Positions 33,923 through 52,100 of a DNA stretch of 64,000 nucleotides are shown one piece after another. Within the stretch, counting starts at the first letter, position 1, and every line of letters begins with the position of its first letter. The position numbers and the translations under genes are program-made. This DNA is from Mobula hypostoma (Eukaryota). The notes under the pieces were generated by a model. The model ran no database searches. It was not told the DNA's origin and saw only the letters and a program-made list of their open reading frames with translations. The DNA lies in assembly GCF_963921235.1 (NCBI RefSeq), contig NC_086099.1, positions 1,984,001-2,048,000 of the forward strand, given 5' to 3'.

Positions 33923-36832
33923 CTGTGGTGCTAGAAAGTTGGTGAACCCTGTAGAATTTTCTCTATGTAAAGATTTGTGAAGATTTGATCACATTTTATG
34001 TTATATTTATGTAGAAATAGAATTTGAACCTAAAGCGTGATCAAATCTTCACCAGATTCCTAGAACTAGATTAAGATTACCCAATTAGTAAATAACACAA
34101 AACTTGTTCATTTATTTTTTGAGTGCAATGAACCAATATTACATCTATTTGTCAGAAAAATTATGTGAACCTTCACTTTCAGTAACTGGTGTGACCCCGT
34201 TGTACAGCAGTAACTTCAACCAAACATTTCCAGTAACTGTTGATCGGTGCTGCACATCAGCTTGGAGGAATTTTAGGCCATTCCTCCTTACAAAACCGCT
34301 TCAACCCTGGGATGTTGGTCAGCTTCCTTGCATGAACTGCTTGCTTCAGGTCCTTTTCTATAGGATTAAGGTCAGGACTTTAACATGAATTTTCTTCTTT
34401 TTGAACCACACTTGTTGATTTACTCTTGTCTTTCAGATCATTGTCTTCCTGTGTTATCCAACTTCTATTAAGCTTCATTAAGTGACAGACTGCTACTCTG
34501 ACATTGTCCTGTAAAATGTCGATGCAGTTTTGAATTCATTGTTTCTTCAATGATGGCAAGCTGTTCTGGCCCTGAGGCAGCAAAACGGCCTCAAACCATC
34601 AGGCCATAAGACCGGAATCTGACCCATCGAGTCTGCTCCACCATTCAATCATGGCTGAACCTTTTTTTATCTATCTCCTCCTCAACTCCAGTTCCCAGCC
34701 TTCTCCCTGTAACCTTTGATGCCATGTCCAATCAAGAACCTATCAATCTCTGCCTTAAATACACCCAACGACCCGGTCTCCACAGCTGCACGTGGCAATA
34801 AACTCCACAAATTCACCATTCTTTGGCTAAAGAAATTTCTCCAGATCTCTGTTTTGAAAGGGCGCCCCTCTATCCTGAGGCTGTGCCCTCTTGTCATAGA
34901 CTCACAACCATGGGAAACATCTGTCTAGGCCTTTCAACATTCAAAAGGTTTCAATGAGATCCCCCCTCATCCTTCTGAATTCCAGCGAGTACAGACCCAG
35001 AGCCATCAAACGTTCTTCGTATGATAACCCTTTCATTCCTGGAATCATCCTTGTGAACCTCCTCCGGATCCTCTCCAATGCCAGCACATCTTTTCTAAAA
35101 TGAGGGGCCCAAAACTGTAGACAATTCTCAAGGTGAGGCCTCACCAGTGCCTTATAAAGCCTCAGCATCTCATCTCTGCTCTTGAAATGAATGCTAACAT
35201 TGCATTTGCCTTCCTCACCACCGACTCAACCTGCAAGTTAACTTTCAGGGTGTTCTACACAAGTCCCTCTGCATCTCAGATTCCTGGATTTTCTCTCCAT
35301 TTAGAAAATAATCCACACTTTTATTTCTGCTACCAAAGTGTATGACCAGGCATTTTCCAACATTGTATTTCATTTGCCACTTTCTTGTCCATTCTCCCAA
35401 TCTGCCTAAGTCCTTCTGCATCCTACCTGTTTCCACAACACTACCTTGCCCCTCCATCAATCTTCGTATCATCTGAAAACTTGGCAACAAGGCCATCTAT
35501 TCCATCATCTAAATCATTTATATACAGCATAAAAAGAGGCAGTCCCAACACCAACCTCTGTGGAACACCAGTAGTCACTGGCAGCCAACCAGAAAAGGAT
35601 CCTTTTATTCCCAGTCGCTGCCTCCTATCAATCAGCCAATGCTCAAACCATGTTAGTAACTTTCCTGTAATACCATGGACTCTTAATTTGGTAAGCAGCC
35701 TCGTGTGTGACACTTTGTCAAAGGCCTTCTGCAAGTCCAAATATACAACATCCACTACACCCCCTTTATCTATCCTACTTGTAATCTCCTCAAAGAATTC
35801 CAACAGTTTCGTTAGGTAGGATTTTCCCTGAAGGAAAATATGCTGACTTTGTACTATCTTGTCCTGTGACACCAAGTACTCCATCAGCTCATCCTTCACA
35901 ATTGACTCCAACATCTTCCCAACCACTGAGGTCAGGCTAACATGATGCTCCTTGCACCATGTTTCACAGTTGGGATGAGGTTTTGGTGTTGGTGTGCAGT
36001 GCCCTTTTGCCTCCAAACATAATAGTGTGCATTTCTGCCAAGAAGTTCAACTTTTGTCTCATCTAACCACAGAACATTGTCTCAGAAACATTGTGGAACT
36101 TGGGATGTGCAGCATTTTTTTTGAGAGCTGTGGTTCCTCTGAACACCATTCTTGTGATTTTCTTATAGTGGACACCTGAACAGAGACTTTAGCAATTTCT
36201 AGATATTTCTGTAGATCTATTAATGTTACCCTTGGGCTCTTTTTCCTTCAGCATTGTACATTGTGCTCTTGCAGGATATCCACTCCTAGGGAGAGTAGCA
36301 ACAATACTGAATTTCCTCCACTTATAGACAGTTTCTCTTAGTGTGGACTGATGAACACTCAGGTCTTCAGAAATGTTTTTTGTAGCCTTTTCCAGCTTCA
36401 TGCATCTCTACAGTTCTTCTAAGGCCCTCTGAAAGTTGTTTGATCGAGGCATGGTGCACGTAAACAGAGCTTTCTTGAGAAGAACAGGCTCTGTCAGTAA
36501 CCTGACTTTGTGTGTCTTTTTTATAGAACAGGGCACCTCTACAACCCACACCTCCAATCTCATCTCATTAATTGGAACACCGGACTCCAAATAGCTTTTG
36601 TAGAAGGCATTACCCCAGAGGTTCACATACTCTTTTGAACCCAGACTATGAATGTTTACATGGTGTACTCAGGAATGATGAGAAGTAGTACAATTGTTGG
36701 TGTGTTATTAGTTTAGGCAGATTGTGTTTGTCTATTGTTGTGATTTAGATGAAAATCAGACCACATTTTATGAGTAATTAATGCAGAAAGCTAGGTAATT
36801 GCAAAGTGGTCATAAGCTTTTTCTTGGAACTG
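33923..36832 (-). mobile_element. Decayed Tc1/mariner transposon with nested CR1 (~34600-35940)
   Basis: TA-flanked CTGTG../..AACTG ends; frameshifted transposase N-terminus (MPRS..MHEAGKGYK..VHQSTLRETVYKWRKF..LPRSG). Confidence 0.75.
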
Positions 36833-37164
36833 TAACTCCACTTTTTATGAAATTCGTTACTCTAATTGATGACTTGTTTTGTGTGTTGCATGTTGCACCC
36901 TGACCGACGTACCACCACAAGAATCTCCTCCAGGAACTCTCCCAGCCCCTGCTACAGTATGATTTTCTTCCCCAATCTTGCCACGCAGACCTCTCACTCT
37001 TGCAGGAACCGGTTCCCTCATTTAGATCCAAACCACCAGATCTTGTCCTCAGGACATCCCTGACTTCACCCCGTACCGTCCCTGAAGGTGAGTCTATAAA
37101 CCAGACCATTGTCACCGACAACTGGGGCAGGGAGTGGGATATTACTGTAGTGGAAACGATAAGG

Positions 37165-38790
37165 TTGGGGGGGTGAGGAACAGAAGAGGGGAAGGTGGGG
37201 AGGTGGTGGGCGAGGGGAAGGTGGAGAGGGGGTGGTGAGGAGGGGACGGTGGAGTGGGGTGGTGGGGAGGTGAGGTGATGGGAAAGTGGGGAGTAGTCGG
37301 TGGGGGGGGGGGTGGAGAGCGGTGGGAGGGTGGGGAGGTGATGGGAAGCAGTCGGTGCTCCGAATGCTCGGGGTGTCAGTCGGACCGTGTCGGGGTGGGG
37401 AGAGCTGATGGGGTGGATGGGGAGTAGTCAGTGGTGGGGTGGGGAGGTGGGAGAGGTGAGGGGGTGGGGAGTAGGCGGGAGGGTGGGGAATAGACGGTGC
37501 TCTGAACGGACGGGGGTGGGGAGAGGAGGAGGGAGGGGTGGGAGGGTGGGGAGGTGATGGGGAGTAGTCGGTGGTGGGGTGGGAGGGTGGGGGGAGGTGA
37601 GGAGGGTGGAGAGGTGGGGGGAGGGGGAAGGTGAGTAGGGTGCGGGAAGGTGAGGAGGGTGGGGAGGTGGGGGAGGGGGAAGGTGAGGAGGGTGAGGAAG
37701 GAGGTGAGGGGGTGGGGAAGGAGGTGAGGGGTGGGGGAGGGAATGAGGGGGGTGGGGGAGGGGTGAAGGAGTGGGGAAGGGGGTGAGGGGGTGGGGAGAG
37801 GTGATGGGGTGGATGGGGAGCAGTCGGTGGTGCAATGGGGAAGGTGGGGGGTGGGAGGGTGGGGAGGGGGAAGGTGAGGGGAGGTGAGGGGGTGGGAGGG
37901 TGGGGAGATGGGGGGAGGGGGAAGGTGGGGAGGTGAGGGGGTGGGGAAGGGTGTGAGGGGGGGTGGGGAGGGGTGAGGGGGAGGGGGGAGGGGTGGGGGA
38001 GGGGTGAGGGAGGGGGTGAGGGGGTGGGGGAGGTGGTGAGGGGTTGGGGGGAGGTGGTGTGGGGGTGGGGGGAGGGGTGTGGGGGTGGGGAAGGAGAGGG
38101 GGTGGGGAAGGGGGTGAGGGGGTGGGGGAGGGGTGAGGGGGTGGGGAAGGAGGTGAGGGGGTGGGGAAGGGGTGAGGGGGTGGGGAAGGGGTGAGGGGGT
38201 GGGGGAGGGTGTGAGGGGTTGGGGAGGGGTGAGGGGGTGGGGAGGGGGTGGGGGAGGGGTGAGGGGGTGGGGGAGGGGTGAGGGGGGTGGGGGAGGGTGT
38301 GAGGGGTTGGGGGGGTGGGGGAGGGGTGAGGGGGTGGGGGAGGGTGTGTGGGGGTGGGGGAGGGGTGAGGGGGTGGGGGAGGGTGTGAGGGGTTGGGGGG
38401 AGGGGTGTGGGGGTGGGGGAGGAGGTGGGTGAGGGGGGGGTGGGGGAGGGGTGAGGGGGGTGGGGGAGGAGGTGGGTGAGGGGGGTGGGGGAGGGGTGGG
38501 TGAGGGGGTGGGGGAGGGTGTGAGGGGTTGGGGGTGAGGGGTGTGGGGTTGGGGGAGGGGTGGGGGGGGGGGAGGGGGTGGGGGAGGGGGAGGGGGGTGG
38601 GGGAGGGGTGTGGGGGTGGGGGAGGGGTGTGGGGGTGGGGGAGGGGTGGGGGAGGAGGTGGGTGAGGGGGGTGGGGGAGGTGGGTGAGGGGGTGGGGGAG
38701 GGGGTGAGGGGGGTGGGGGAGGAGGTGGGTGAGGGGGGTGGGGGAGGGGGTGAGGGGGTGGGGGAGGGGGTGAGGGGGGGTGGGGGGATC
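37165..38790 (+). repeat. G-rich low-complexity tract upstream of SMIM19 (second tract ~39090-39510 in intron 1)
   Basis: Dense G3-G8 runs with GGTGAGGGGG-type degenerate units; extreme G/C strand skew. Confidence 0.9.
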
Positions 38791-38969
38791 AGACGGCGCT
38801 CCGAAGGCTCGGGCAGTCAGTCGGACCGTGTCGGGCGCGGGCAGATTTCCATCGCCAGCGACGCGCCCGCACTTGGGCGCAGTTGGATGACGTAGGAGTA
38901 GCCGGTGCCGATCCGGATCGGTTGCTGAGGCCGGTGGAGAGCGGATTCGGATTCTGCTCCGGCCCCGGG

Positions 38970-39064
38970 ATGGATTACACGGTTCATGAGGCCTGGAACG
39001 ACGCCACCAACGTTTATCTGATGGCCGGGCTGCTGAGTGTCGGGTTGCTGCTTTACGCGAGGAG
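38970..39064 (+). CDS. SMIM19: SMIM19 first coding exon (includes transmembrane segment)
   Basis: [31 protein letters not shown](R) matches recalled SMIM19 [23 protein letters not shown]; ends AG|GCGAGT (GC donor, phase 2). Confidence 0.92.
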
Positions 39065-40536
39065 GCGAGTCAGGCCCGGGCCCGGTCTGGGTGGGGGGGA
39101 CGGGCGGGATCCGGGTTCCCGTCCGGGGTGGGGGTGATGGTGGGTTGGCGGGTGGGATGATGGTGAGGGGGTGGGGGGTGAGGTGGGGGTGGGGGTGGTG
39201 GGGAGAGGGGTGGGGTGAGGTGGGGGTGGTGGGGGGTGAGGTGGGGGTGGTGGGGAGAGGGGTGGGGTGAGGTGGGGGTGGTGGGGGGTGAGGTGGGGGT
39301 GGGGAGTGAGATGGGGGTGGTGGGGAGGGGGTTGGTCGTAAGGGGGCGGGGGCGGGATCCGGGTTCCTGTTGGGGGGGGTGAGGGTGGGGAGTGGGGGGG
39401 TGGGGGTTGGTCGGGGGGGGTGATGGGGAGTGGGGTGGGTGTGGGGGTGGTGGGGGGTGTGAGGGTGGGGGTGGGGGTTGGTCAGTGGGGGGGTCTGTGG
39501 ATGGGGGGCTGTCGATCGATGGGCGTCGGTGGTGGGAGAGGCGCCGCGAAATGGGGCTGAGCAGAAGCGAGGTTTCAGCAGCGGTCAGCTGGGGGGATCC
39601 GAGCGCTTCGGGACCGGTTGTAACAGTCCAGGATACTGTGTCCTGTCCTGTCTGTAGTGACCACTCAGCCTGTCCAGTGTCCCTCCAGTACCTGTGTGTG
39701 CAGCAAACCCCGATCATCACCCGAACCATAATGGTTTCTGATGGTCTGAGCAGTGCCTTGTAAAGCCTCATCATTGTTCTTATATTCTTGTCCCCTCGAA
39801 TAAATGCCAACATTGCATTCTCCTTCCTTACCATTGGGTCAATCTGCAAATTAACCTTTCAGTAATCCAGCAAAAGTCCCTTTGCACGTCAGATTGTTTT
39901 TAGAAATTCTCCCCGTTCAGAAAATATTTTGCGTCTTTATCTCTTCTACCAAACTGCATGGCCACTCGCTCTCCTGCACTCTTGTCATCTGCTGCTTCTT
40001 TGCCTTTTCTGCCAATCTGTCCAAGCCCGTACGCAGCCTACACACACAAAATGCTGCAGGAACTCAGCAGGCCCAGCAGCATCTATGGAAAAAAACATTG
40101 AGAAAAAAGGCTGAGGAGTAGATTTGAAAGGTGGGGGGAGGGAGAGAGAAACACAAGGTGATGGGTGAAAGCCGGAGGGGGAGGGATGAAGTAAAGAACT
40201 GGGAGATTGATTAGTGAAAGGGATAGAAGCCATGAAAGAAAGAAGAGGGAGGGGGAGTCCCGGAGGGAGGTGGGCAGGCAGGGAGTATTCCAAAGTGGAG
40301 TATTCCGTTTGGGTAGCCACTCAGGTTGGAGGAACAACAGCTTGTCTTCTGTGTGGGTAACCTCCAACCTGATGGCATGAACATCAATTTCTCAAACTTC
40401 CAGTAATGCCCCCCACCCCTTCCCCTTCATTTCCCGTCCCCTTTTCCCTCTCTCACCTTGTCTCCTTGCAGCCAACCAGAAAAGGCTCCCTTTATTCCCA
40501 CTCTCTGCCTCCTGCCAATCAGCCACTGCTCTAGCC

Positions 40537-42665
40537 ATAGAAATCATAGAAACTACAGCAAAGAAACAGGCCTTTTGGCCCTTCTTGGCTGTGCCGAACC
40601 ATTTTCTGCCTAGTCCCACTGACCTGCACACGGAACATATCCCTCCATACACCTCCAATCCATGTATCTGTCCAATTTATTCTTAAATGTTAAAAAAGAA
40701 CCTGCATTTACCACCTCGTCTGGCAGCTCATTCCATACTCCCACCACTCTCTGTGTGAAGAAGCCCCCCCCCTAATGTTCCCTTTAAACTTTGCTCCCCT
40801 CACCCTAAACCCATGTCCTCTGGTTTTTTTCTCCCCTTGTCTCAGTGGAAAAAGCCTGCTTGCATTCACTCTATCTATACCCATCATAATTTTATATACC
40901 TCTATCAAATCTCCCCTCATTCTTCTACACTCCAGGGAATAAAGTCCTAACCTATTCAACCTTTCTCTGTAACTGAGTTTCTCAAGTCCCGGCAACATCC
41001 TTGTAAACCTTCTCTGCACTCTTTCAACCTTATTAATACCCTTCCTGTAATTTGGTGACCAAAACTGAACACAATACTCCAGATTCGGCCTCACCAATGC
41101 CTTATACAACCTCATCATAACATTCCAGTTCTTATACTCAATACTTTGATTAATAAAGGCCAATGTACCAAAAGCTCTCTTTACGACCCTATCTACCTGT
41201 GACGCCACTTTTAGGGAATTTTGTATCTGTATTCCCAGATCCCTCTGTTCCACTGCACTCCTCAGTGCCTTACCATTAACCCTGTATGTTCTACGATGGT
41301 TTGTCCTTCCAACGTGCAATACCTCACACTTGTCAGTATTAAACTCGATCTGCCATTTTTCCAGCTGGTCCAAGTCCCTCTGCAGGCTCTGAAAACCTTC
41401 CTCACTGTCTACTACACCTTCAATCTTTGTATCATCAGCAAACTTGCTGATCCAATTTACCACATTATCATCCAGATCATTGATATAGATGACAAATAAC
41501 AATGGACCCAGCACTGATCCCTGTGGCACACCACTAGTCACAGGCCTCCACTCAGAGAAGCAATTCTCTACCACCACTCTCTGGCTTCTTCCATCGAGCC
41601 AATGTCTAATCCAATTTACCACCTCTCCATGTATACCTAGCGACTGAATTTTCCTAACTAACCTCCCATGCGGGACCTTGTCAAAGGCCTTACTGAAGTC
41701 CATGTAGACAATATCCACTGCCTTCCCTTCATCCACTTTCCTGGTAACCTCCTCGAAAAACTCCAATAGATTGGTCAAACATGACCTACCATGCACAAAG
41801 CCATGTTGACTCTCCCTAATAAGCCCCTGTCTATCCAAATGCTTGTAGATTCTGTCTCTTAGTACTCCCTCCAATAACTTACCTACTACTGACGTTAAAC
41901 TCACCGGCCTATAATTTCCCGGATTACTTTTCGATCCTTTTTTAAACAACAGAACAACATGAGCCACTCTCCAATCCTCCGGCACTTCACCCGTAGACAG
42001 CGACATTTTAAATATTTCTGCCAGGGCCCCTGCAATTTCAACACTAGTCTCCTTCAAGGTCCAAGGGAACACCCTGCCAGGTCCCGGGGATTTATCCACT
42101 TTAATTTTCCTCAAGACAGCAAGCACCTCCTCCTTTTCGATCTGTACAGTTTCCATGATCTCACTACTTGTTTCCCTTAATTCCATAGACTTCATGCTAG
42201 TTTCCTTAGTAAATATAGACGCAAAAAACCTATTTAAGATCTCCCCCATTTCCTTTGGTTCCGCACATAGCCGACCACTCTGATCTTCAAGAGGACCAAT
42301 TTTATCCCTTACAATCCTTTTGCTCTTAATATACTTGTAAAAGCTCTTTGGATTATCCTTCACTTTGACTGCCAAGGCAACCTCATGTCTTCTTTTAGCC
42401 CTCCTGATTTCTTTCTTAAGTATTTTCTTGCACTTCTTATACTCCTCAAGCACCTGATTTACCCCGTTTCCTATACATTTCATACAACTCCCTCTTCTTC
42501 TTTATCAGAGTTGCAATATCCCTTGAGAACCAAGGTTCCTTATTCCTATTCACTTTGCCTTTAATCCTGACAGGAACGTACAAATTCTGCACTCTCAAAA
42601 TTTCTCCTTTGAAGGCTTCCCACCTACCGATCACATCTTTGCCAGAGAACAACCTGTCCCAATAC
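40537..42665 (-). mobile_element. Relatively young 5'-truncated CR1 ORF2 (591-aa open RT region) in SMIM19 intron 1
   Basis: RT motifs uninterrupted over 40708-42483; TTCTATG-type tail. Confidence 0.93.
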
Positions 42666-43906
42666 ACGCTTTTTAGAATCTTTCATGCAACACCATGGAC
42701 TCATAGTTTGTAAAGCAGCCTCGTGTGGCAGCTTGTCAAAGGCTGTCTGAAAATCCAAGTTCACAACACTAGCCGATTCTCCTTTGCCTACCCTGCTTGT
42801 TATTTCTTCAAAGAACTCCAACAATTTGTCAGGCAAGATATTCCCTTGAAGAAACCATGCTAACTGCGACCTGTTTTATCATGTGTCTCCAGTGCAAAGG
42901 AGATGTGTATGGCAAGTTTTTATTTTATTTTATTTTATTTATGGCAAATATGTAGGTTTACCTTTATAATTTTATCCTAGTTGCACATAGGGATACGGGG
43001 AAAAGGCAGGAGATTGGGGCTGAGAGGAAAATTGGATTGTCCATGACGAAATGGCGAAGCAGATGCAGTCAGCTGAATGTCCTAATTCTTGTCCTATATT
43101 TTATGATCTTGTGTACAATACCTCCAATTATCCCCTCACTCCCTTCCTCCGTCTCATCACCCTCGTACCTTTGTTCTACCCTCACACTCTGTCTGTAAGT
43201 GTGAGGTGGTTCAAGTTGGTAGGTCAAATAGGATAGCAGAATATAGTATTAATGGTAAGACTCTTGGCAGTGTGGAGGGATCAGAGGGATCTTGGGGTCT
43301 GAGTCCTTAGGACACTGAAAGCAGCTGCGTAGGTTGACTCTGTGGTTAAGGAGGCATACGGTGCCTTCTTAACCACAGGTGTATAAGATGATGAGAGGCA
43401 TTGATCGTGTGGACAGTCAGAGGCTTTTTCCCAGGGCTGAAATGGCTGCCACAAGAGGACACAGGTTTAAGGTGCTGGGAAGTAGGTACAGAGGAGATGT
43501 CAGGGGTAAGTGTTTTACGCAGAGAGTGGTGAGTGCGTGGAATGGGCTGGTGGTGGTGGTGGATACGAGAGGGTCTTTTAAGAGATTCCTGGATGGCTAC
43601 AATGGAGCTTAGAAAAATAGAGGGCTATGTGTAAAGCCCAGGCAGTTCTAAGGTAGGGACATGCTCAGCACAGCTTTGTGGGCTGAAGGGCCTGTATTGT
43701 GCTGTAGGGTTTCCATGTTTCTATGTCTCGTTCTCTCTCTTAACCACATATATGTGATGAACACTGTGGGGAATTTACACCATATCAGCAAACATGAGAA
43801 GTTGTCTAAGTATTTGAAAGATTTTGTAATGGATTTCTAAAAGGATGAGTGGTTAAGTGACCTTATTAAATTTATTACCTTGCTGATTTGAGAGCATTTC
43901 TTTCAG

Positions 43907-44031
43907 AAATAAAAGACAGATCATGAGAATATTCACTGTCCCTCCTGCTGGTAATTCCAGTCCAGAGCCCAACTTCTATGACAACCTACAGAAGGTTCGC
44001 TTGCGTCAGCAACTGGACATGTACTCGATCG
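43907..44031 (+). CDS. SMIM19: SMIM19 second coding exon
   Basis: tttctttcag acceptor; [41 protein letters not shown] matches recalled [35 protein letters not shown]; donor G|GTAAGC; phases fit both neighbours. Confidence 0.93.
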
Positions 44032-44800
44032 GTAAGCACGTTAGGCAACCGGTTACATACCCGATTGATCAGCAACTGGACATGTACTCGATCGGTAAGC
44101 ACGTTAGGCAACCGGTTACATACCCGATTGATCAGCAACTGGACATGTACTCGACCGGTAAGCACGTTAGGCAACCGGTTACATACCCGATTGATCAGCA
44201 ACTGGACATGTACTCGACCGGTAAGCACGTTAGGCAACCGGTTACATACCCGATTGATCAGCAACTGGACATGTACTCGACCGGTAAGCACGTTAGGCAA
44301 CCGGTTACATACCCGATTGATCAGCAACTGGACATGTACTCGACCGGTAAGCACGTTAGGCAACCGGTTACATACCCGATTGATCAGCAACTGGACATGT
44401 ACTCGACCGGTAAGCACGTTAGGCAACCGGTTACATACCCGATTGATCAGCAACTGGACATGTACTCGACCGGTAAGCACGTTAGGCAACCGGTTACATA
44501 CCCGATTGATCAGCAACTGGACATGTACTTGACCGGTAAGCACGTTAGGCAACCGGTTACATACCCGATTGATCAGCAACTGGACATGTACTCGACCGGT
44601 AAGCACGTTAGGCAACCGGTTACATACCCGATTGATCAGCAACTGGACATGTACTCGACCGGTAAGCACGTTAGGCAACCGGTTACATACCCGATTGATC
44701 AGCAACTGGACATGTACTCGATCGGTAAGCACGTTAGGCAACCGGTTACATACCCGATTGATCAGCAACTGGACATGTACCAGATTGGTAAGCATGTTAG
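44007..44800 (+). repeat. 63-bp tandem repeat (12 full + 1 partial copy) spanning the SMIM19 exon-2/intron-2 junction
   Basis: Unit CAGCAACTGGACATGTACTCGAyCG|GTAAGCACGTTAGGCAACCGGTTACATACCCGATTGAT starting 44007, 44070 ... 44763. Confidence 0.97.
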
Positions 44801-45170
44801 CCATGTTAGTGAAACCATTTTAGTTTTGAATTGGATAATCTCAAGTGTCTGTGTGGATGTAATAAATTAAGGAAGTAACAACAGAATAAATTATTTTTCA
44901 CTCAGAGGCCATTCTTTGGTGTAACATCACTGATGTAACTAGCATTTGTGACCTGTGTCTACCTGTGTTTGGTTGCTTCCAAAACATTTTGACCTCTTGA
45001 CTGTTCCTGAATTTAATCACTTGATCAGTGACAACTGTGCCCTCCTGCTGCTAATACCAGTCCAGAGCCCAGACTTTGGTGACAACCCCGCATTAGGGTT
45101 CACATATTTTTCAATTTTTTGCAGTTGTGGCTTTTGTATTTTTAAATGTATGTATAGTCGCTGTTGTGTT

Positions 45171-45471
45171 GGCGCGTGGCCAAGTGGTTAAGGCATTCGT
45201 CTAGTGATCTGAAGGTCGCTATTCGAGCCTTGGCTAAGGCAGCGTGTTGTGTCCTTGAGCAAAGCACTTAATCACACATTGCTCTGCGACGACACTGGTG
45301 CCAAGCTGTATGGGTCCTAATGCCCTTCCCTTGGACAACATCAGTGTCGTGGAGAGGGGAGACTTGCAGCATGGGCAACTGCCAGTCTTCCATACAACCT
45401 TGCCCAGGCCTGCGCCCGGCAAACCTTCCAAGGTGCAAATCCATGGTCTCACGAGACTAATGGATGCCTAT
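45171..45471 (+). mobile_element. Full-length tRNA-derived SINE with CORE-like centre
   Basis: A-box TGGCCAAGTGG, B-box-like TTCGAGCC, GTGTCCTTGAGCAAAGCACTTAA; 17-bp TSD TATAGTCGCT(G/A)TTGTGT (45153-45169, 45472-45488). Confidence 0.85.
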
Positions 45472-46259
45472 TATAGTCGCTATTGTGTAATAGTGTGTAG
45501 TGTATGCTGTGTTGGCCTTCATTAGTCAGGGGATTGAGTTCAAGAGCCGTGAGGTAATGTTGCCGCTCTATAAAGCTGGTTAGACCCCACTTGAAGTATT
45601 GTGTTCAGTTCTGATCGCCTCACTATAGGAGGGATGTGGAAGTTTTAGAGAGGCTGCAAGGGAGATAGAAACATAGAAACATAGAAGATAGGTGCAGGAG
45701 TAGGCCATTCGGCCCTTCGAGCCTGCACCGCCATTTATTATGATCATGGCTGATCATCCAACTCAGAACCCCGCCCCAGCCTTCCCTCCATACCTCCTGA
45801 TCCCTGTAGCCACAAGGGCCATATCTAATTCCCTCTTAAATATAGCCAATGAACTGGCCTCAACTGTTTCCTGTGGCAGAGAATTCCACAGATTCACCAG
45901 TCTCTGTGTGAAGAAGTTTTTCCTAATCTCAGTCCTAAAAGGCTTCCCCTCTATCCTCAAACTGTGACCCCTCGTTCTGGATTTACCAGGATGCTGCCTG
46001 GAATGGAGAGCATGTCTTACAAGGATAAGTTGAGTGAGCCTGGCTTTTCTCTTGGAGGCGAGGAGGACGAGAGAGAGCTGACTTAGTGGAGGTGTGTAAG
46101 ATGAGAGGTATATGAGAAACGTCGTGTGGGACAGTCAGGGTCAGGGTCGGATTCCTGGGGTGGCAATCGCCAACACTAGAAAACACCAACCTTTGCGTCA
46201 TTTGCAAATGTACTAACCCACCCTTCCACTTTCTCAACAAAATCATTTATAAAAAATCA

Positions 46260-46930
46260 CAGGTCAGTCAAGTCTGTTGTCATTTAATTTTGTACATGTA
46301 TATAACGTATATAACCATATAATGTATATAGAAATGAGACAACGTTTCTCTGAACCAGGGTGTAAAGCAGAGTAGTACACAGAACACACGATAACGTATG
46401 AAGGTACGGATAAAATCTACAGATGAATCACACTTAAATAACAAACTAAAGTGTGTTAATATTAAATATTGTAAGGTACAGAACAGATTAACCGGTGACA
46501 CTTCGAATACAATGTGGTCAGTCGGGAGTTTAGAAGCGTAATGTCCCGAGGGAAGAAACTGTTTCTCATCCTGACCGTTCTTGTTTATCTCCTGGCTGGT
46601 GGTAGAAGGTCAGAGGATGATGGACGGGTGGGATTCTTAATACTAAGGGCCCTATGCATGCAGCACTCCTGATAAATGTTCCCGATGGATGGTAGGGAGA
46701 CTCCTGTGATCCTCTCGGCCGTTCTCACAGTCCTTTGTAGGGACTTCTGGTCGGATGTTCCACTGCTCCCATTCCAGATGGAGCTGCAGTTCATCAGGGC
46801 GCTCTCCACGGTGCCCCTGTAAAACGCAGTTACGATGGGGTGTGGAGGCCGTGTCTCAACCTTCTCAGGGAGGGGAGGCGATGCTGTGCCGTCTTGTTCA
46901 GGGAGGTTATGTTATGGGACCGGGTGAGGT
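46260..46930 (-). mobile_element. Rex1/L2-type LINE 3' fragment
   Basis: KSLQRTVRTAERITGVSLPSI motif; GACT-type tail. Confidence 0.7.
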
Positions 46931-47426
46931 AATCTGTGATGTAGAGGTCCCAGAACACAACTGGTTACAGACCTCCAGGCAGAATACCCTCCATCTACAA
47001 CCACCCTCTCCCTTCTGCGGGCAATCTCATTCTGAATCCACGGAGCCGAATTTCTCTGGAACCCCTGCCTCCTGACCTTCTGAATGAACCTGCCAATGGC
47101 AACCTTATCAAACACCTTACTAAAATCGTTATCCACTACATCCACTGTTCTATCTTCATCAGTCACACCCTCAAAGATTATAACTATGATCAGCTGCTAA
47201 TTCTTTATTTGTAGTTGTCTATAATCTCAGCAAGTTTCTTTGTATTGGATCTTTGCTCTAGTCAACTAAGATTCTTCCCAAATCCAGACTTGTGATTTAA
47301 CGTACCAATCTGCGAGCTGAAATAAGACTTTTAATAAAATATTTTTATATTTTACTAATAATTTCAAAAGTAAGGTAGTTCTGCTTTCATTTTAGGTATA
47401 TTAACATGTTGATTTGATCATTTCAG

Positions 47427-47485
47427 CACGCAAGTACGAGCAAGAGCAGGGACAGTTGGACAGTGTGCAGCTTACAATGGAATGA
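47427..47485 (+). CDS. SMIM19: SMIM19 last coding exon
   Basis: catttcag acceptor; (A)RKYEQEQGQLDSVQLTME* matches recalled [20 protein letters not shown]; spliced CDS 95+125+59=279 nt (92 aa plus stop). Confidence 0.92.
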
Positions 47486-47631
47486 CACTTGCAGTACCAT
47501 CGCTGGTAGAAGTAGAAGAATGTGTGGGACAGTTGCACGAGCTAGAAAACCCAGTAAAGTGCTCCTTCAAAGCCTGCAATTGGTGGGGAAATGCTGGGAA
47601 TTGAACCTTTAATACACACATCTACAGGACT

Positions 47632-47637
47632 AATAAA
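47632..47637 (+). terminator. Candidate SMIM19 polyadenylation signal (another AATAAA at 48793)
   Basis: AATAAA ~150 nt after the stop codon. Confidence 0.4.
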
Positions 47638-49169
47638 CGAGAGACATAGAGGTTACTGCCCACCTCACTAAAAATATTTTTCCATCCTTCACGTCTAACA
47701 GCAATCATGTCAATTGTGAAAATTTTCTCCTGACAAATATGGAAAAGGGATTCAAGATCCCCAGTACGCTGGTGTTAATAGTTTTATGTAGAGTACCATG
47801 ACCAACCCAAAGGTCTCGAAGTTTGTATTACTGGGTTACTGAGAATGTCTGTTTGTTTTTGAGGATTGAATTTGTTATGAATGACTGGATTGTTTTCAAT
47901 TAGGAGTTAAATCAAGCAGCTCCAATATAAGATTCCTACATACAGAGCTTGGTTTAACATAAACAAAAATGTCTTGGTCAAAGTGCAACTTTGTTATAGA
48001 ACATTCGGCCCACTGTGTTGTGCTGACCTTAGAATCTACTCTAAAATTCCTTGGTAACTCTTCCCTCCCACATAATCCTCCATTTCTGCCTATCTGGAGT
48101 CTGTTAAATTTCCCCTGTGCATCTGCTTCTCCCGCCAACCCTGCTCTAGCTACTCTGTGCATTTAAAAAGCACCTACCTCTGTCATCTATTCTATCTTGT
48201 CAGACATGTTACTGATACTTGGTATAACATTCTAATTCATCGTAAAAGTTAGAATTATATGACTTGTAAAAGAAGAAATAATCTTCACTGAATTGTTTTT
48301 AAATGAAAATATTCTGATCAATGGTCAGATAATTTTCTGTTTTTCCTTTTCGACAACTATTGATGTGTCCATGGGCATTTGTGGATTAGAGTGTCATTTT
48401 GCCTTTCAGCAGGGTTACCAGCTAATGAGCCAGGATGAGAAGTGCAATCTCAGCTCTATCTCTGCAGCCACTGGAATCGCAGACAAATGTAAATTAATTC
48501 AGGACTTGACGGACTTTGAATTAAGATATTTCTGATCTGTTTGCTATTCAGTGTGCACATCCTAGGGCAGGCATCTTCAGGAATTCGTGCATCAGTAATT
48601 TTTCAGCTACCTGAGGAGGTTGTTTTGATGGTATGTTTCTGAATGGTAACTTGGGTTTGGTTGTGATTTATCCTAGGTTTGACCCCAAAAACAAATGGAC
48701 AGCAACTCTGCTCCGCAAATTACATTTCAGTCAGTGTTAATTTGACTGGGTGAAAATTTATGCTTTGTTTGAAAATATCTGAAAATGTTATCAATAAAAT
48801 ATTTTAATTGACTCTCAATTAGAGTGTTAATATTTTTGTTTATATCATTGTTTTCTGATTTATGTAGGAGGAAGTGCCAATTATTTTTGTATAGACAGTA
48901 GTTTTATCTGGACTTCACACATCAAAGATTAGATTCAACGGAGTTTACCTCAGCCAGATGCCTGGTGGTCAAAGAATTCTAATAGTCACAATTTTAAGTC
49001 AACAATTTAGCTGAGAGAACTAAATGTCATATTTCCAAGTTTAACAGTGATATACAAAAACTGTGGAAGCTGAGTACTGGACAGTGTGTAAAGAGACTTG
49101 GAAATACAGAGATGCTGAGTGAGTGGTGAGAAAATAGCGGGAAGCAAAATTATTGGAAATGATTGAGAA

Positions 49170-52100
49170 GTTAGAAACATAGAAAACCTACAGCACAATA
49201 CAGGCCCTTCAGCTCACAAAGCTGTGTCGAACATGTCCCTACCTTAGAAATTACTAGGCTTACCTATAGCCCTCTATTTTTCTAAGCTCCATGTATCTAT
49301 CCAAAAGTCTCTTAAACGACCCTATCGTATCCGCCTCCACCACCGATGCCGGCAGCCCATTCCACGTACTCACCACTCTCCACAGGATATGTGGTTCCCA
49401 AAGAGGATAAGTATTCTACAGGAAAGATGACACAAATGTGGCTAACCAGAGAAGTCAGAGCCAGCATAAACACCAAAGAGAAGCTGATGTTGGACACCAT
49501 TTCACCAATTCAACCTTCCCTTGTTGCCCAATTAAAGCAACGAGGGAGATTGAAACGCCAACTGCCTGCTTTTTCATTGCTGGTGAAATGCTCTGCTACA
49601 GAGAGGGATAATGCTGCCCAGGTTGCTGGAGAGATAGTGATGGGGACAAGGAAATGGTGATCGAACTGAATAAGTATTTTCAAAACTAGTAAATCTACAG
49701 CACATCGCAGACCCTTTGGTCCACAGTGTTGTGCTGACCATGTAACCAAATCTAGAAGCTGCCTAGAATTTCCCTACTGCAATGCCCTCTATTTTTCTAA
49801 GTTACATGTATCTATCTAAGTCTCTTAAAAGACCCTATCGTTTCCACCTCCACTACCATCCCTGGCAGCCCATTCCACGCACTCAACACTCTGTGGAAAA
49901 ATTTGCCCCTGATATCCCCTCTGTACCTACTTCCAAGCACCTTAAAACTGTGCCCTCTCATGTTAGTCATTTTAGCCCTGGGAAAAAGCCTCTGACTATC
50001 CACATGATCAATGCCTCTCATCATCTTATACACCTCTATCAAGTCACGTCTCATCCTCCGTCGCTCCAAGGAGAAAAGGCCGAGTTCACTCAACCTATTC
50101 TCATAAGGCATGCTCCCCAATCCAGGCAACATCCTCGTAAATCTCCTCTGCACCCTTTCTATGGTTTCCACATCCTTCCCGTAGTGAGGTGACCAGAACT
50201 GAACACAGTACTCCAAGTGGGGTCTAACTAAGGTCTTTATATAGCTCTTATATAAAGTCTCACGTCTCTTGAACTCAGTCCCAAAGTTGATGAAGCCCAA
50301 TGCACTGTATGCCTTCTTAACAACACCGTCAACCTGCAGAGCAGTTTTGAGTGTCTAATGGACATGGACACCAAGATCTCGCTGATCCTCCACACTGCCA
50401 AGTCTTACCATTAATATTATATTCTGTCTTCAAATTTGACCGACCGAAATGAACCACTTCACACTTTTCTGGGTTGGACTCCATCTGCCACTTCACAGGC
50501 CAGTTCTGCTTCCTATTGATGTCGCACTGCAACCTCTAATTTTGCAACAGTCCTCACTGTGGGAGACACTCTCAGTATGGTGGAAGTTCCAGGTGTCACA
50601 GGTCATGAAGTGTGTGAAGTTACCATAACTTGAGAGAAGGTTCTTGGCAAACTGCAAGTTCCAAAGGTAGCTAAGTCACCTGGTGTTGATGGTGAACACC
50701 TCGGGGTCCTGAAAGAGCTGGCTGAACAGATTGTGGAGGCATTAGTAATGATCTTTCATCAAGACTGGAAAATTGCAAAGTCAGTCTGCGCTTCAGGAAG
50801 GGAGAGAGGCCGAAGAAAGGAAACTATTGGCCAGTTAGTCTGACCTATGTGCTTGGGAAGATGTTGGAGTTCATTATCAACGATGAGGTTATCACAGTAC
50901 TTGGAGACACGTGATAAAATGGGTCGCAGGCAGTGTGGATTCCTCAAGGGAAAATCTTGCCTGACAGATATGTTGGAATTCTTTGAAGAAAAAACAAACA
51001 GGATAGACAAAGGAGAATTGGTTGATGTTTTGTGTACTTGGATTTTCAGAAGGCCTTTGATAAGGTGCCACACATGAGGCTGCTTAACAAGCTTTGAGCC
51101 TATAGTATTACAGGAAAGATTCTAACATGGACTGATGTGGCTGATTGGTAGGAGGCAAAGAGTGGGAATAAAGGGAGCCTTTTCTGGCCGGCTGCCAGTG
51201 ACTAGTGTTCCACAGGTGTCTGTGTTGGGTTTCATTCTTTTTGTGTTACATGTCAATGATTTAGATAATGGAATTGATGGCTTTGTTGCAAAGTTTGCAG
51301 ACAATATGAAGCTAGGTGGAGGGACAGGTAGGTTTGAGGAAGTAGAGAGGCTACAGAAGAAATTAGTTTAGGAGAATGGGCAAAGAAGTGGCAGATGGAA
51401 TACAGTGTCAGGAAGTGTATGGTCATGCACTTTGGTAGAAAAATGAAAGGGTTGACGATTTTCTAAATAGAAGACAAAAAATGGAAATGGCAAGAGACTT
51501 GGGAGTCCTTGTGCAGGATTCTCTAAAGATTAATTTGCAAGTTGAGTCTTGGAGTGTTGTGAGCAGGTTTGGGCCCCTTATCTTAGAAAGGATGTGACGA
51601 AACTGGAGAGGAGTCAAATGAAGTTCATGAATATGGTTCCAGGATTGAATGGTTTGTCATATGAAGGGTGTTTGATGGCTCTGGGCCTGTATACACTGGA
51701 ATTCAGAAGAATGAGGGATGACCTCATGGAAACCTATTAAATGGTGAAAGGAATCGATAGAGTAGATGTGGAGAGGATGTTTCCTATGATGGGAGAATCT
51801 AAGACTAGAGGACACAGCCTCAGAATAGAGGGGTGAAATTTTTGAATGGAGATAAGGAAGAATTTCTTTAGCGATGAGTGGTGAATCTGTGGAATTCATT
51901 GTCACAGGCAGTTGTGGAGGCCAAGTCTTTATGTATATTTAAGGCAGAGGTTGATAGATTCTTGATTGGTCAGGGCACGAAGGAATACGGGAAGAAGGCA
52001 GGAGATTGGGGCTGAGAGGAAACTGGATCAGCCATGATGAAATGCTTGGCAGTCTTGATGAGCCAATGGCCTTATTCTGCTCCTGTATCTTAGGGTCTTG
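49170..52100. mobile_element. Cluster of nested, decayed CR1 fragments on both strands
   Basis: LVRPHLEYCVQFWSP, GFLKGKSCLT, KFADN fragments. Confidence 0.8.

What the first reader, a model, noticed from the sequence alone, without database searches (positions are those of the whole stretch)
43907..44800. In-frame splice-donor ladder: a 63-bp repeat copies the SMIM19 exon-2 end and donor 13 times
Seen: the unit holds the last 25 exonic nt, the donor G|GTAAGC and the following intronic sequence. It is exactly 21 codons and stop-free (ORF 43923-44870), so 13 near-identical phase-1 donors lie at 44032+63n up to 44788. Inference: any of them would splice in frame to exon 3, adding 0-12 copies of [20 protein letters not shown](T/I) (up to +252 aa on a 92-aa membrane protein) and repeating the conserved QQLDMYS motif. 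Because the donors are equal in sequence, the ancestral one has no obvious priority, so copy number could set protein length.
Basis: partly seen in the sequence, partly recalled or inferred. Interest (0 to 1): 0.9.

Follow-up and report, generated by a model that had tools for sequence, protein, structure and literature searches.

The report
Splice-donor-repeating minisatellite in ray SMIM19
A real 63-bp repeat in the lesser devil ray's SMIM19 gene copies the end of exon 2 and its splice donor 13 times, but it belongs to a known class of boundary-spanning minisatellites in which, where tested, the first donor is the one used (sometimes with the next one or two), so it most likely does not change the protein.

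Summary
Window 44006-44800 is a 63-bp x 12.6 tandem array, 98% matching. It reiterates the last 26 nt of SMIM19 exon 2 and its donor G|GTAAGC. Thirteen phase-1 donors lie at 44032+63n, and each gives an intact ORF of 92+21n aa.

The window is Mobula hypostoma (GCA_963921235.1). Its RefSeq model is 92 aa and uses donor 1.

New context: the 63-mer is a young, lineage-specific amplification built on an older ~35-bp junction minisatellite. That older repeat has about 3 copies in M. birostris and about 12 in the stingrays Hypanus and Hemitrygon. In those species equally strong downstream donors are out of frame or behind stops, yet exon 3 stays perfectly conserved. So donor 1 must be used there despite the decoys.

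The arrangement is a described class (human F7 IVS7, IFI6, CBS, LMNB2, PDGFA). In the F7 minigenes only the most upstream donor was used. IFI6 and CBS also use the next two.

Minor use of donors 2-3 remains possible and would be in frame here. No transcript data for this species were reachable.

Verdict: new member of a known kind, modest interest.

The parts
38970..39064 (+). SMIM19 exon 1 coding part ([31 protein letters not shown] + 2 nt). It is followed by a GC donor, GAG|GCGAGT.
   Evidence: tblastn with ray orthologues. The splice reconstruction reproduces P0249 exactly. GC donor compared across species.
43907..44031 (+). SMIM19 exon 2. It is 125 nt, enters in phase 2 and leaves in phase 1, and encodes (R)[41 protein letters not shown](G/).
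   Evidence: Pfam UPF0697 E=2.2e-19; tblastn; exact reconstruction of the 92-aa RefSeq product.
44032..44037 (+). Authentic, most upstream donor: TCG|GTAAGC.
   Evidence: Used by the annotated 92-aa product. The orthologous donor is used in a skate transcript contig, L004.
44006..44761 (+). Twelve full 63-bp units. Each unit is the last 26 nt of exon 2, plus donor GTAAGC, plus 31 further intronic nt. The units are 98-100% identical to each other, with only 2 variable columns. CpG o/e is 1.24.
44762..44800 (+). 13th, hybrid unit. Its 5' part resembles unit 1. Its 3' part (CAGATTGGTAAGCATGTTAGCC) is orthologous to the third 35-bp copy of M. birostris. It carries the last donor, TTG|GTAAGC, at 44788.
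44095..44793 (+). Twelve downstream pseudo-donors, with GT at 44095, 44158, 44221, 44284, 44347, 44410, 44473, 44536, 44599, 44662, 44725 and 44788. All are phase 1 and lie in an open frame.
44868..44870 (+). First in-frame stop (TAA) of the read-through frame from exon 2.
45034..45087 (+). Old relic copy of the middle of exon 2 inside intron 2. It is 87% identical to exon 2, carries indels, and is shared with M. birostris and Hypanus.
47427..47485 (+). SMIM19 exon 3 coding part. The acceptor is ...tttcag|CA CGC AAG. G+CA gives Ala, followed by RKYEQEQGQLDSVQLTME and TGA at 47483-47485.

Best explanation
This is a junction-spanning minisatellite of the F7-IVS7 type in intron 2 of Mobula hypostoma SMIM19.

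Origin. An older ~35-bp repeat was seeded from the last ~22 nt of exon 2 plus the first ~13 nt of the intron. It already existed in the common ancestor of mobulid and dasyatid rays. In the M. hypostoma lineage, a 63-bp higher-order unit was recently amplified to 12 copies by slippage or unequal exchange. That unit consists of copy 1 with its live donor, plus the first 27 nt of copy 2. The interior of the array was then homogenised.

Splicing. The most upstream donor (44032) most likely remains the working donor, by positional priority (exon definition or 5'-to-3' scanning from the exon-2 acceptor). This gives the normal 92-aa protein. The 12 downstream donors would then be functional-looking but essentially silent pseudo-sites, with at most a small leak to donor 2 or 3.

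What is unusual here is that the unit happens to be 21 stop-free codons. Any leak would therefore give stable in-frame +21n-aa isoforms rather than frameshifted ones.

Shown: the anatomy, the evolutionary origin, the in-frame potential, and the annotation choice. Inferred: which donor is actually used.
For: Array and donors. Gene identity and exact exon structure.

The window is byte-identical to M. hypostoma OY992594.1, and the RefSeq product XP_062898628.1 is 92 aa.

Older 35-bp array:
- Hypanus, 11.8 copies at 79% match.
- Hemitrygon, about 12 copies.
- M. birostris, 3 copies.
- Absent in skate and white shark.
The 63-bp source segment is single-copy in M. birostris at 98% identity.

Youth of the array:
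- Units are 98-100% identical, whereas the two Mobula species are 93-95% identical (about 3-4% mismatches plus gaps) across the unique parts of the locus.
- CpG o/e is 1.24 in the array against 0.40 in the flanks, and only one CpG has decayed.

Positional priority:
- In F7 minigenes, only the most upstream functional donor was used. Pseudo-sites with a consensus value up to 91 did not compete (PMC1557585).
- According to the introduction of the same paper, LMNB2 (100 bp) and PDGF (81 bp) use only the authentic donor.
- By an approximate PWM, the window's inner donors are only marginally stronger than donor 1 (9.0 versus 7.4 bits).

Evidence from rays:
- Dasyatids keep four equal-scoring decoys at +71, +106, +141 and +380, all out of frame or behind a stop.
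- Their exon 3 CDS is nevertheless 59/59 identical to M. birostris while the flanks are about 88% identical. M. hypostoma differs only at 2 synonymous sites.
- A skate transcript contig shows the canonical junction.

No database protein holds the repeat peptide.
Against: - No RNA evidence for M. hypostoma could be reached. A RefSeq XP model may be homology-guided and is not proof of donor usage.
- The F7 rule was shown in mammalian cells, with a weaker donor (GTGGGT) and a 37-bp unit. Here the donor is stronger, with G|GTAAG giving 6 contiguous U1 base pairs.
- In-vitro work with two strong donors finds nearly exclusive use of the intron-proximal (downstream) site (PMC3413131).
- Donors 3-11 score slightly better than donor 1.
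- Predicted RNA accessibility does not favour donor 1, and donor 13 is the most open.
- IFI6 and CBS show that the second and third repeat donors can be used constitutively.
Confidence: 0.62

Rival explanations
1. Limited ladder, as in IFI6 and CBS. Donor 1 dominates, but donors 2 and perhaps 3 are used constitutively at a minor yet real level. This would give in-frame 113- and 134-aa SMIM19 isoforms with one or two extra 21-aa modules in the cytosolic tail.
For: [quoted passage not shown] Donor 2 has the same 9-mer as donor 1, and donor 3 scores slightly higher. The products would be in frame and would have no premature stop.
Against: RefSeq lists a single 92-aa product, with no isoform suffix in its name. 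No protein with the repeat exists in the public collections. The two precedents with extra donor use have shorter units (31 bp for CBS, per the reference title seen; 12 nt for IFI6, from my memory of Turri 1995). Units of 37, 81 and 100 bp showed first-donor-only use.
Confidence: 0.22
2. Intron-proximal rule. All the strong donors are occupied by U1 and the one nearest the 3' splice site wins (donor 13 or 12). The main product would then be a 344- or 323-aa protein whose length tracks copy number.
For: [quoted passage not shown] Donor 13 is predicted to be the most accessible.
Against: The same rule applied to dasyatid rays would always select the +380 decoy and destroy the reading frame, yet their exon 3 is under clear purifying selection. 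The F7 in-vivo minigene data show the opposite for sub-consensus donors. An 881-nt internal exon would be unusually long for vertebrate exon definition (general knowledge). The annotation gives 92 aa.
Confidence: 0.05
3. One reading: donor choice is roughly even across the 13 donors. This would give a 63-nt ladder of 13 isoforms, with VNTR genotype setting the protein length distribution.
For: Local sequence context of at least +/-25 nt and predicted accessibility are nearly identical for donors 1-12. All products are in frame.
Against: Neither the experimental rule from in-vivo minigenes (most upstream donor) nor the one from in-vitro work (intron-proximal donor) predicts an even spread. No described junction minisatellite uses more than the first three donors.
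Confidence: 0.03
4. The copy number, or the array itself, is an assembly artefact, either a mis-expanded or a collapsed repeat.
For: Tandem arrays are error-prone in assemblies. Only one assembly of this species was available, and L006 is the same record as the window.
Against: The array is only 795 bp, well within a single long read (general knowledge). It has an ordered internal variant structure, with ATC at units 1, 2 and 12, ACC at units 3-11, and one CpG>TpG in unit 9. It also has a hybrid terminal unit that matches M. birostris copy 3. Related arrays occur at the same junction in three other independently assembled ray genomes.
Confidence: 0.05

Closest known systems
Human F7 intron 7 minisatellite: 37-bp unit, 5-9 copies, first monomer spanning the exon 7/IVS7 boundary (Borensztajn et al. 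2006, PMC1557585)
   Same: A tandem array whose first unit spans the exon-intron boundary, so the authentic donor is followed by several pseudo-donors of identical sequence. The pseudo-sites have a functional-looking sequence.
   Different: The unit here is 63 bp rather than 37 bp, and there are 13 donors rather than 5-9. The donor here is stronger (GTAAGC versus GTGGGT). Here every pseudo-site is in frame and stop-free. In F7 most are not. Usage has been tested experimentally in F7 and is untested here.
Human IFI6 (6-16) intron 2 minisatellite providing multiple splice donors (Turri et al. 1995, cited in PMC1557585 and PMC4526556)
   Same: A junction-spanning repeat that reiterates the donor. 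Downstream repeat donors give in-frame, slightly longer protein isoforms. This is the closest precedent for the 'ladder' idea.
   Different: The IFI6 unit is very short (12 nt, from my memory of that paper, which could not be opened). Only the first three of about 26 donors are used. Here the unit is 63 nt and usage is unknown.
Human CBS IVS13 31-bp VNTR, LMNB2 100-bp minisatellite and PDGF intron 4 81-bp minisatellite (listed in PMC1557585)
   Same: The same architecture. The LMNB2 and PDGF units bracket the 63-bp size, and in both only the authentic donor is used.
   Different: These are different genes in a mammalian host, and all details come second-hand from the review text.
The ~35-bp junction minisatellite of SMIM19 in other myliobatiform rays (Hypanus sabinus, Hemitrygon akajei, Mobula birostris)
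   Same: It is orthologous: same junction, same seed sequence (AACTGGACATGTAC..GGTAAGCA), and it is the direct ancestor of the 63-mer.
   Different: The period of 35 is not a multiple of 3. The copies are diverged (79% match). Many donors have decayed. The surviving decoys are out of frame or behind stops.

Membership tests
Junction-spanning minisatellite with reiterated 5' splice site (F7 IVS7 / IFI6 / CBS / LMNB2 / PDGF type) | Head-to-tail array of a 10-100-bp monomer | tested here: met
   Period 63, 12.6 copies, 98% matches.
Junction-spanning minisatellite with reiterated 5' splice site (F7 IVS7 / IFI6 / CBS / LMNB2 / PDGF type) | The first monomer spans an exon-intron boundary of a real gene | tested here: met
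   Unit 1 is 44006-44068 and exon 2 ends at 44031. The exon was verified by Pfam and by exact reconstruction of the RefSeq product.
Junction-spanning minisatellite with reiterated 5' splice site (F7 IVS7 / IFI6 / CBS / LMNB2 / PDGF type) | The donor consensus is reiterated, identical or near-identical, in the following monomers | tested here: met
   G|GTAAGCA occurs 13 times at 63-nt spacing. The donors differ only at -3/-2.
Junction-spanning minisatellite with reiterated 5' splice site (F7 IVS7 / IFI6 / CBS / LMNB2 / PDGF type) | In vivo, only the most upstream donor (or the first 2-3) is used | not testable with these tools
   No transcript data for M. hypostoma were reachable. Indirect evidence only: the 92-aa RefSeq model and exon 3 constraint in rays with out-of-frame decoys.
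Junction-spanning minisatellite with reiterated 5' splice site (F7 IVS7 / IFI6 / CBS / LMNB2 / PDGF type) | Copy number is polymorphic among individuals (VNTR) | not testable with these tools
   Only one assembly of the species was available. Between species, copy number and period do differ.
SMIM19 / UPF0697 (PF15117) | Significant match to the family profile and orthologous exon structure | tested here: met
   E=2.2e-19, above the gathering score. The three-exon splice reconstruction equals M. hypostoma SMIM19 P0249.
Coding VNTR (repeat translated as part of the protein, e.g. the MUC1 or PER3 type) | The repeat lies inside the expressed coding sequence | tested here: not met
   The annotated product contains no repeat unit. 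No protein in about 5.8 billion sequences or 1.84 billion representatives carries the repeat peptide. Real expression remains untested.
Subtle tandem donors (GYNGYN-type alternative 5' splice sites) | Alternative donors a few nucleotides apart within one U1 footprint | tested here: not met
   The spacing is 63 nt.

The most novel reading that the evidence does not exclude
In M. hypostoma the downstream donors might be used substantially, either spread along the array or dominated by the intron-proximal donor. In that case the VNTR would be undergoing exonisation now. SMIM19 would carry a variable number of 21-aa modules that each repeat the conserved QQLDMYS motif, and minisatellite genotype would set the length of the protein's cytosolic tail. 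That would be a natural example of a repeat domain arising through donor reiteration.
Probability: 0.08. Interest if true: 0.7.

Novelty: new member of a known kind. Interest (0 to 1): 0.3.

Why it matters
Minisatellites that copy a splice donor are natural competition experiments for 5' splice-site choice. This one has features the classic human cases lack.
- It has 13 donors with the same core, G|GTAAGCA.
- Every alternative is in frame and has no premature stop, so even rare use of a downstream donor would survive as mRNA and protein instead of being degraded.
- Sister species carry the ancestral state: 3 copies in M. birostris and about 12 out-of-frame 35-bp copies in stingrays.

A simple exon2-exon3 RT-PCR in M. 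hypostoma would therefore test, in a non-mammalian vertebrate, two competing rules: that the most upstream donor wins, or that the intron-proximal donor wins. If donor 1 is used exclusively, as expected, the locus is an ordinary intronic VNTR with no consequence for the protein.

Tried and rejected
1. Search for any protein carrying the repeat peptide.
- A word-indexed search of the 315-aa read-through ORF (candidates of 173-551 aa) found only SMIM19 proteins matching the first ~40 aa.
- An exhaustive HMMER search against 1.84 billion representatives gave only about 20%-identity low-complexity hits over the repeat part.
- Result: nothing found. A protein hidden inside a 50% cluster cannot be excluded.

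2. Transcript evidence. Exact-sequence look-ups for the Mobula and Hypanus proteins returned only the genome records, with no Logan transcript contigs. Only the skate has a transcript contig, L004, which shows the canonical junction.

3. RNA structure as a reason for donor priority. The partition-function accessibility of the 9-nt donor is 0.22-0.25 for donors 1-12 and 0.38 for donor 13. Structure therefore does not explain a preference for donor 1, and I rejected it as a discriminator.

4. Donor strength as a discriminator. An approximate PWM, with frequencies typed from general knowledge and not MaxEntScan, gives 7.4, 9.0 and 7.6 bits. The differences are too small to decide anything.

5. 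"In-frame and stop-free means selected". Rejected, because the chance expectation is about 12% and the array is too young to carry a selection signal (2 variable columns).

6. Look-ups that failed. The sawfish locus was not on record. The Turri 1995 paper was not held.

7. Earlier notes of the scan near this place concern the SRP72 upstream repeat and do not bear on this finding.

Full report

Yes. Tandem Repeats Finder reports one array at 44006-44800 with period 63, 12.6 copies, 98% matches, no indels and score 1527.

Printed in register, there are 12 full units (44006-44761) and a 13th unit that matches for about 39 nt and then runs into unique intron. The motif GGTAAGCA occurs exactly 13 times, with its GT at 44032+63n up to 44788. 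The 14-nt core AACTGGACATGTAC occurs 13 times on the + strand and nowhere else in the window on either strand. So this is a local array, not a dispersed satellite.

Only two columns vary among the 12 full units:
- C/T at column 24, giving ATC in units 1, 2 and 12 and ACC in units 3-11.
- One CpG>TpG change in unit 9.

**2. What gene, and is the exon/donor reading right?**

Translation of 43908-44030 hits Pfam UPF0697 (PF15117, the SMIM19 family) at E=2.2e-19. tblastn with ray orthologues places three coding exons. The exon 3 acceptor is ...tttcag|CA CGC AAG at 47427.

Joining 38970-39064, 43907-44031 and 47427-47485 reproduces exactly the 92-aa protein P0249, which is XP_062898628.1, SMIM19 of Mobula hypostoma. 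The fetched M. hypostoma locus L006 (GCA_963921235.1, OY992594.1) is byte-identical to window 35970-50485. So the window is that genome, and its public annotation uses donor 1.

Exon 2 leaves in phase 1. G|CA gives the Ala that all orthologues have (...MYSI|ARKYEQ...). Using donor n instead of donor 1 gives single-stop ORFs of 92+21(n-1) aa, up to 344 aa. The read-through frame only closes at TAA 44868-44870.

- 26 rather than 25 exonic nt lie in the unit.
- The donors differ at -3/-2: TCG| three times, CCG| nine times, TTG| once.

**3. Where the array came from (new)**

The orthologous junction in other rays already carries a repeat, but a different one.

- Hypanus sabinus has 11.8 copies of a 35-bp unit, AACTGGACATGTACCCGATTGGTAAGCACATTAGT, at 79% match (L002:25175-25582).
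- Hemitrygon akajei has about 12 copies (L007:15005-15434).
- Mobula birostris has 3 copies (L001:16845-16951).
- The skate and the white shark have none.

The 35-mer is itself the last ~22 nt of exon 2 plus the first ~13 nt of the intron. A junction-spanning minisatellite is therefore old in Myliobatiformes.

The 63-bp unit of the window equals copy 1 (with the live donor) plus the first 27 nt of copy 2. Copy 2's donor position reads TGATAAG in M. birostris. This 63-bp segment is single-copy in M. birostris at 98% identity. The window's last unit is a copy-1/copy-3 hybrid.

The two Mobula species are 93-95% identical (about 3-4% mismatches plus gaps) over the unique parts of the locus. The units, in contrast, are 98-100% identical to each other. 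The array's CpG o/e is 1.24 against 0.40 in the flanking intron.

The 63-bp amplification is thus a young, lineage-specific, higher-order expansion, with the homogenised centre and older edges typical of minisatellites. This ordered internal structure, and the related arrays in three other independently assembled genomes, argue against an assembly artefact. Raw reads could not be checked.

**4. Which donor is used?**

No transcript data for M. hypostoma were reachable. The evidence is indirect.

(a) The architecture is a described class. Borensztajn et al. 2006 (PMC1557585) list minisatellites whose first monomer spans an exon-intron boundary:
- F7 IVS7: 37 bp, 5-9 copies.
- IFI6/6-16: 25 pseudo-sites.
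- CBS IVS13: 15-20 copies.
- LMNB2: 100 bp, 10-15 copies.
- PDGF intron 4: 81 bp, 16-18 copies.

In F7 minigenes in three cell types, the pseudo-sites are functional but silent, and only the most upstream functional donor is used. Raising a pseudo-site's consensus value from 74 up to 91 did not change this. Only perfect CAG|GTGAGT sites competed. As the first usable donor moved downstream, exon skipping increased.

According to the introduction of the same paper, LMNB2 and PDGF use only the authentic donor, and IFI6 and CBS also use the next two (see also PMC4526556).

(b) The window's donors are good but not perfect. G|GTAAG gives 6 contiguous U1 pairs, with mismatches at -3/-2 and +6. By an approximate PWM, the inner ones are only slightly better than donor 1 (9.0 versus 7.4 bits).

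(c) A test internal to rays. Hypanus carries four downstream TTG|GTAAGC decoys at +71, +106, +141 and +380. All are out of frame or behind an in-frame stop. M. birostris carries one at +71, which is frameshifting. Yet the exon 3 coding sequence is 59/59 identical between the dasyatids and M. birostris, while the 180-nt region around it is about 88% identical. M. hypostoma differs only at two synonymous sites. At 12% divergence, about 7 changes would be expected (0.88^59 is about 5e-4, my arithmetic). Exon 3 is therefore read in the donor-1 frame in rays that have equal decoys. So the upstream donor works, and the intron-proximal decoy does not take over.

(d) A skate RNA-derived contig (L004, SRR11241630) shows the canonical junction.

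(e) No protein in the public collections contains the repeat peptide.

Some evidence points the other way.
- In-vitro work with two strong donors finds almost exclusive use of the intron-proximal site (Hodson et al. 2012, PMC3413131).
- Predicted RNA accessibility is equal for donors 1-12 and highest for donor 13.
- A RefSeq XP model may be homology-guided.

Notably, the two experimental rules predict opposite extremes (92 aa or about 344 aa).

**5. Most likely mechanism**

Donor 1 keeps priority by position, being the first donor met downstream of the exon-2 acceptor and giving a 125-nt exon. It yields the normal 92-aa SMIM19. Donors 2-13 are silent pseudo-sites, and the array is a neutral, probably polymorphic, intronic VNTR (confidence about 0.6).

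The main rival is a small IFI6/CBS-like leak to donors 2-3 (about 0.2). In this species alone, that leak would give stable in-frame +21 and +42-aa isoforms. Intron-proximal dominance, an even ladder, and an assembly artefact are each unlikely (0.05 or less).

That the unit is 3n and stop-free has a chance expectation of about 12%. With two variable columns, the array carries no selection signal.

**6. Comparison and novelty**

This is a new member of a known kind, the junction-spanning, donor-reiterating minisatellite. Its distinguishing points are:
- the number of donors (13);
- a fully open frame;
- a traceable origin as a higher-order amplification of an older 35-bp junction repeat shared across myliobatiform rays.

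It is not a coding VNTR by current annotation, and it is not a GYNGYN-type tandem donor.

Interest is modest. It would be a clean natural substrate for testing 5' splice-site choice in a cartilaginous fish. The default expectation, however, is that nothing happens to the protein.

Noticed in passing
window 39065-39066 (also L001 ~10096, L003 ~3156): SMIM19 intron 1 begins with a GC donor (GAG|GCGAGT) in both Mobula species and in the skate. In Hypanus, Hemitrygon and the white shark it begins with GT. This looks like a GC-AG intron with lineage-specific GT/GC switching.
   Followed up: partly
window 45034-45087; L001:17185-17238; L002:25829-25876: A ~54-nt relic copy of the middle of exon 2 (87% identical, 2 indels, reading PPAANTSPEPRLW) lies inside intron 2 and is shared by Mobula and Hypanus. 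It is an old partial exon duplication downstream of the minisatellite.
   Followed up: partly
window 43412-43723 and 49172-50000: Inverted copies of a TE-like element (arms of 104 nt at 86% and 90 nt at 89% complementarity) flank exon 2 through exon 3 of SMIM19. This geometry can favour back-splicing or circRNA formation. It was not examined.
   Followed up: no
window 44006-44761: The array is CpG-dense, with 59 CpG in 756 bp and o/e 1.24, against 0.40 in the flanking intron. It is either very young or protected from methylation, and it amounts to a small CpG-island-like block inside the gene.
   Followed up: partly
window ~45117 versus L001:17268-18489: M. birostris has about 1.2 kb of extra sequence in intron 2 relative to M. 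hypostoma. This is an insertion in one species or a deletion in the other, and the extra sequence was not characterised.
   Followed up: no
window 37670-39380, minus strand: Many weak tblastn hits to proline/serine-rich strings (PPPPSPSP...) lie on the minus strand just upstream of and over SMIM19 exon 1. They indicate a GC-rich low-complexity repeat block at the promoter or CpG-island region.
   Followed up: no
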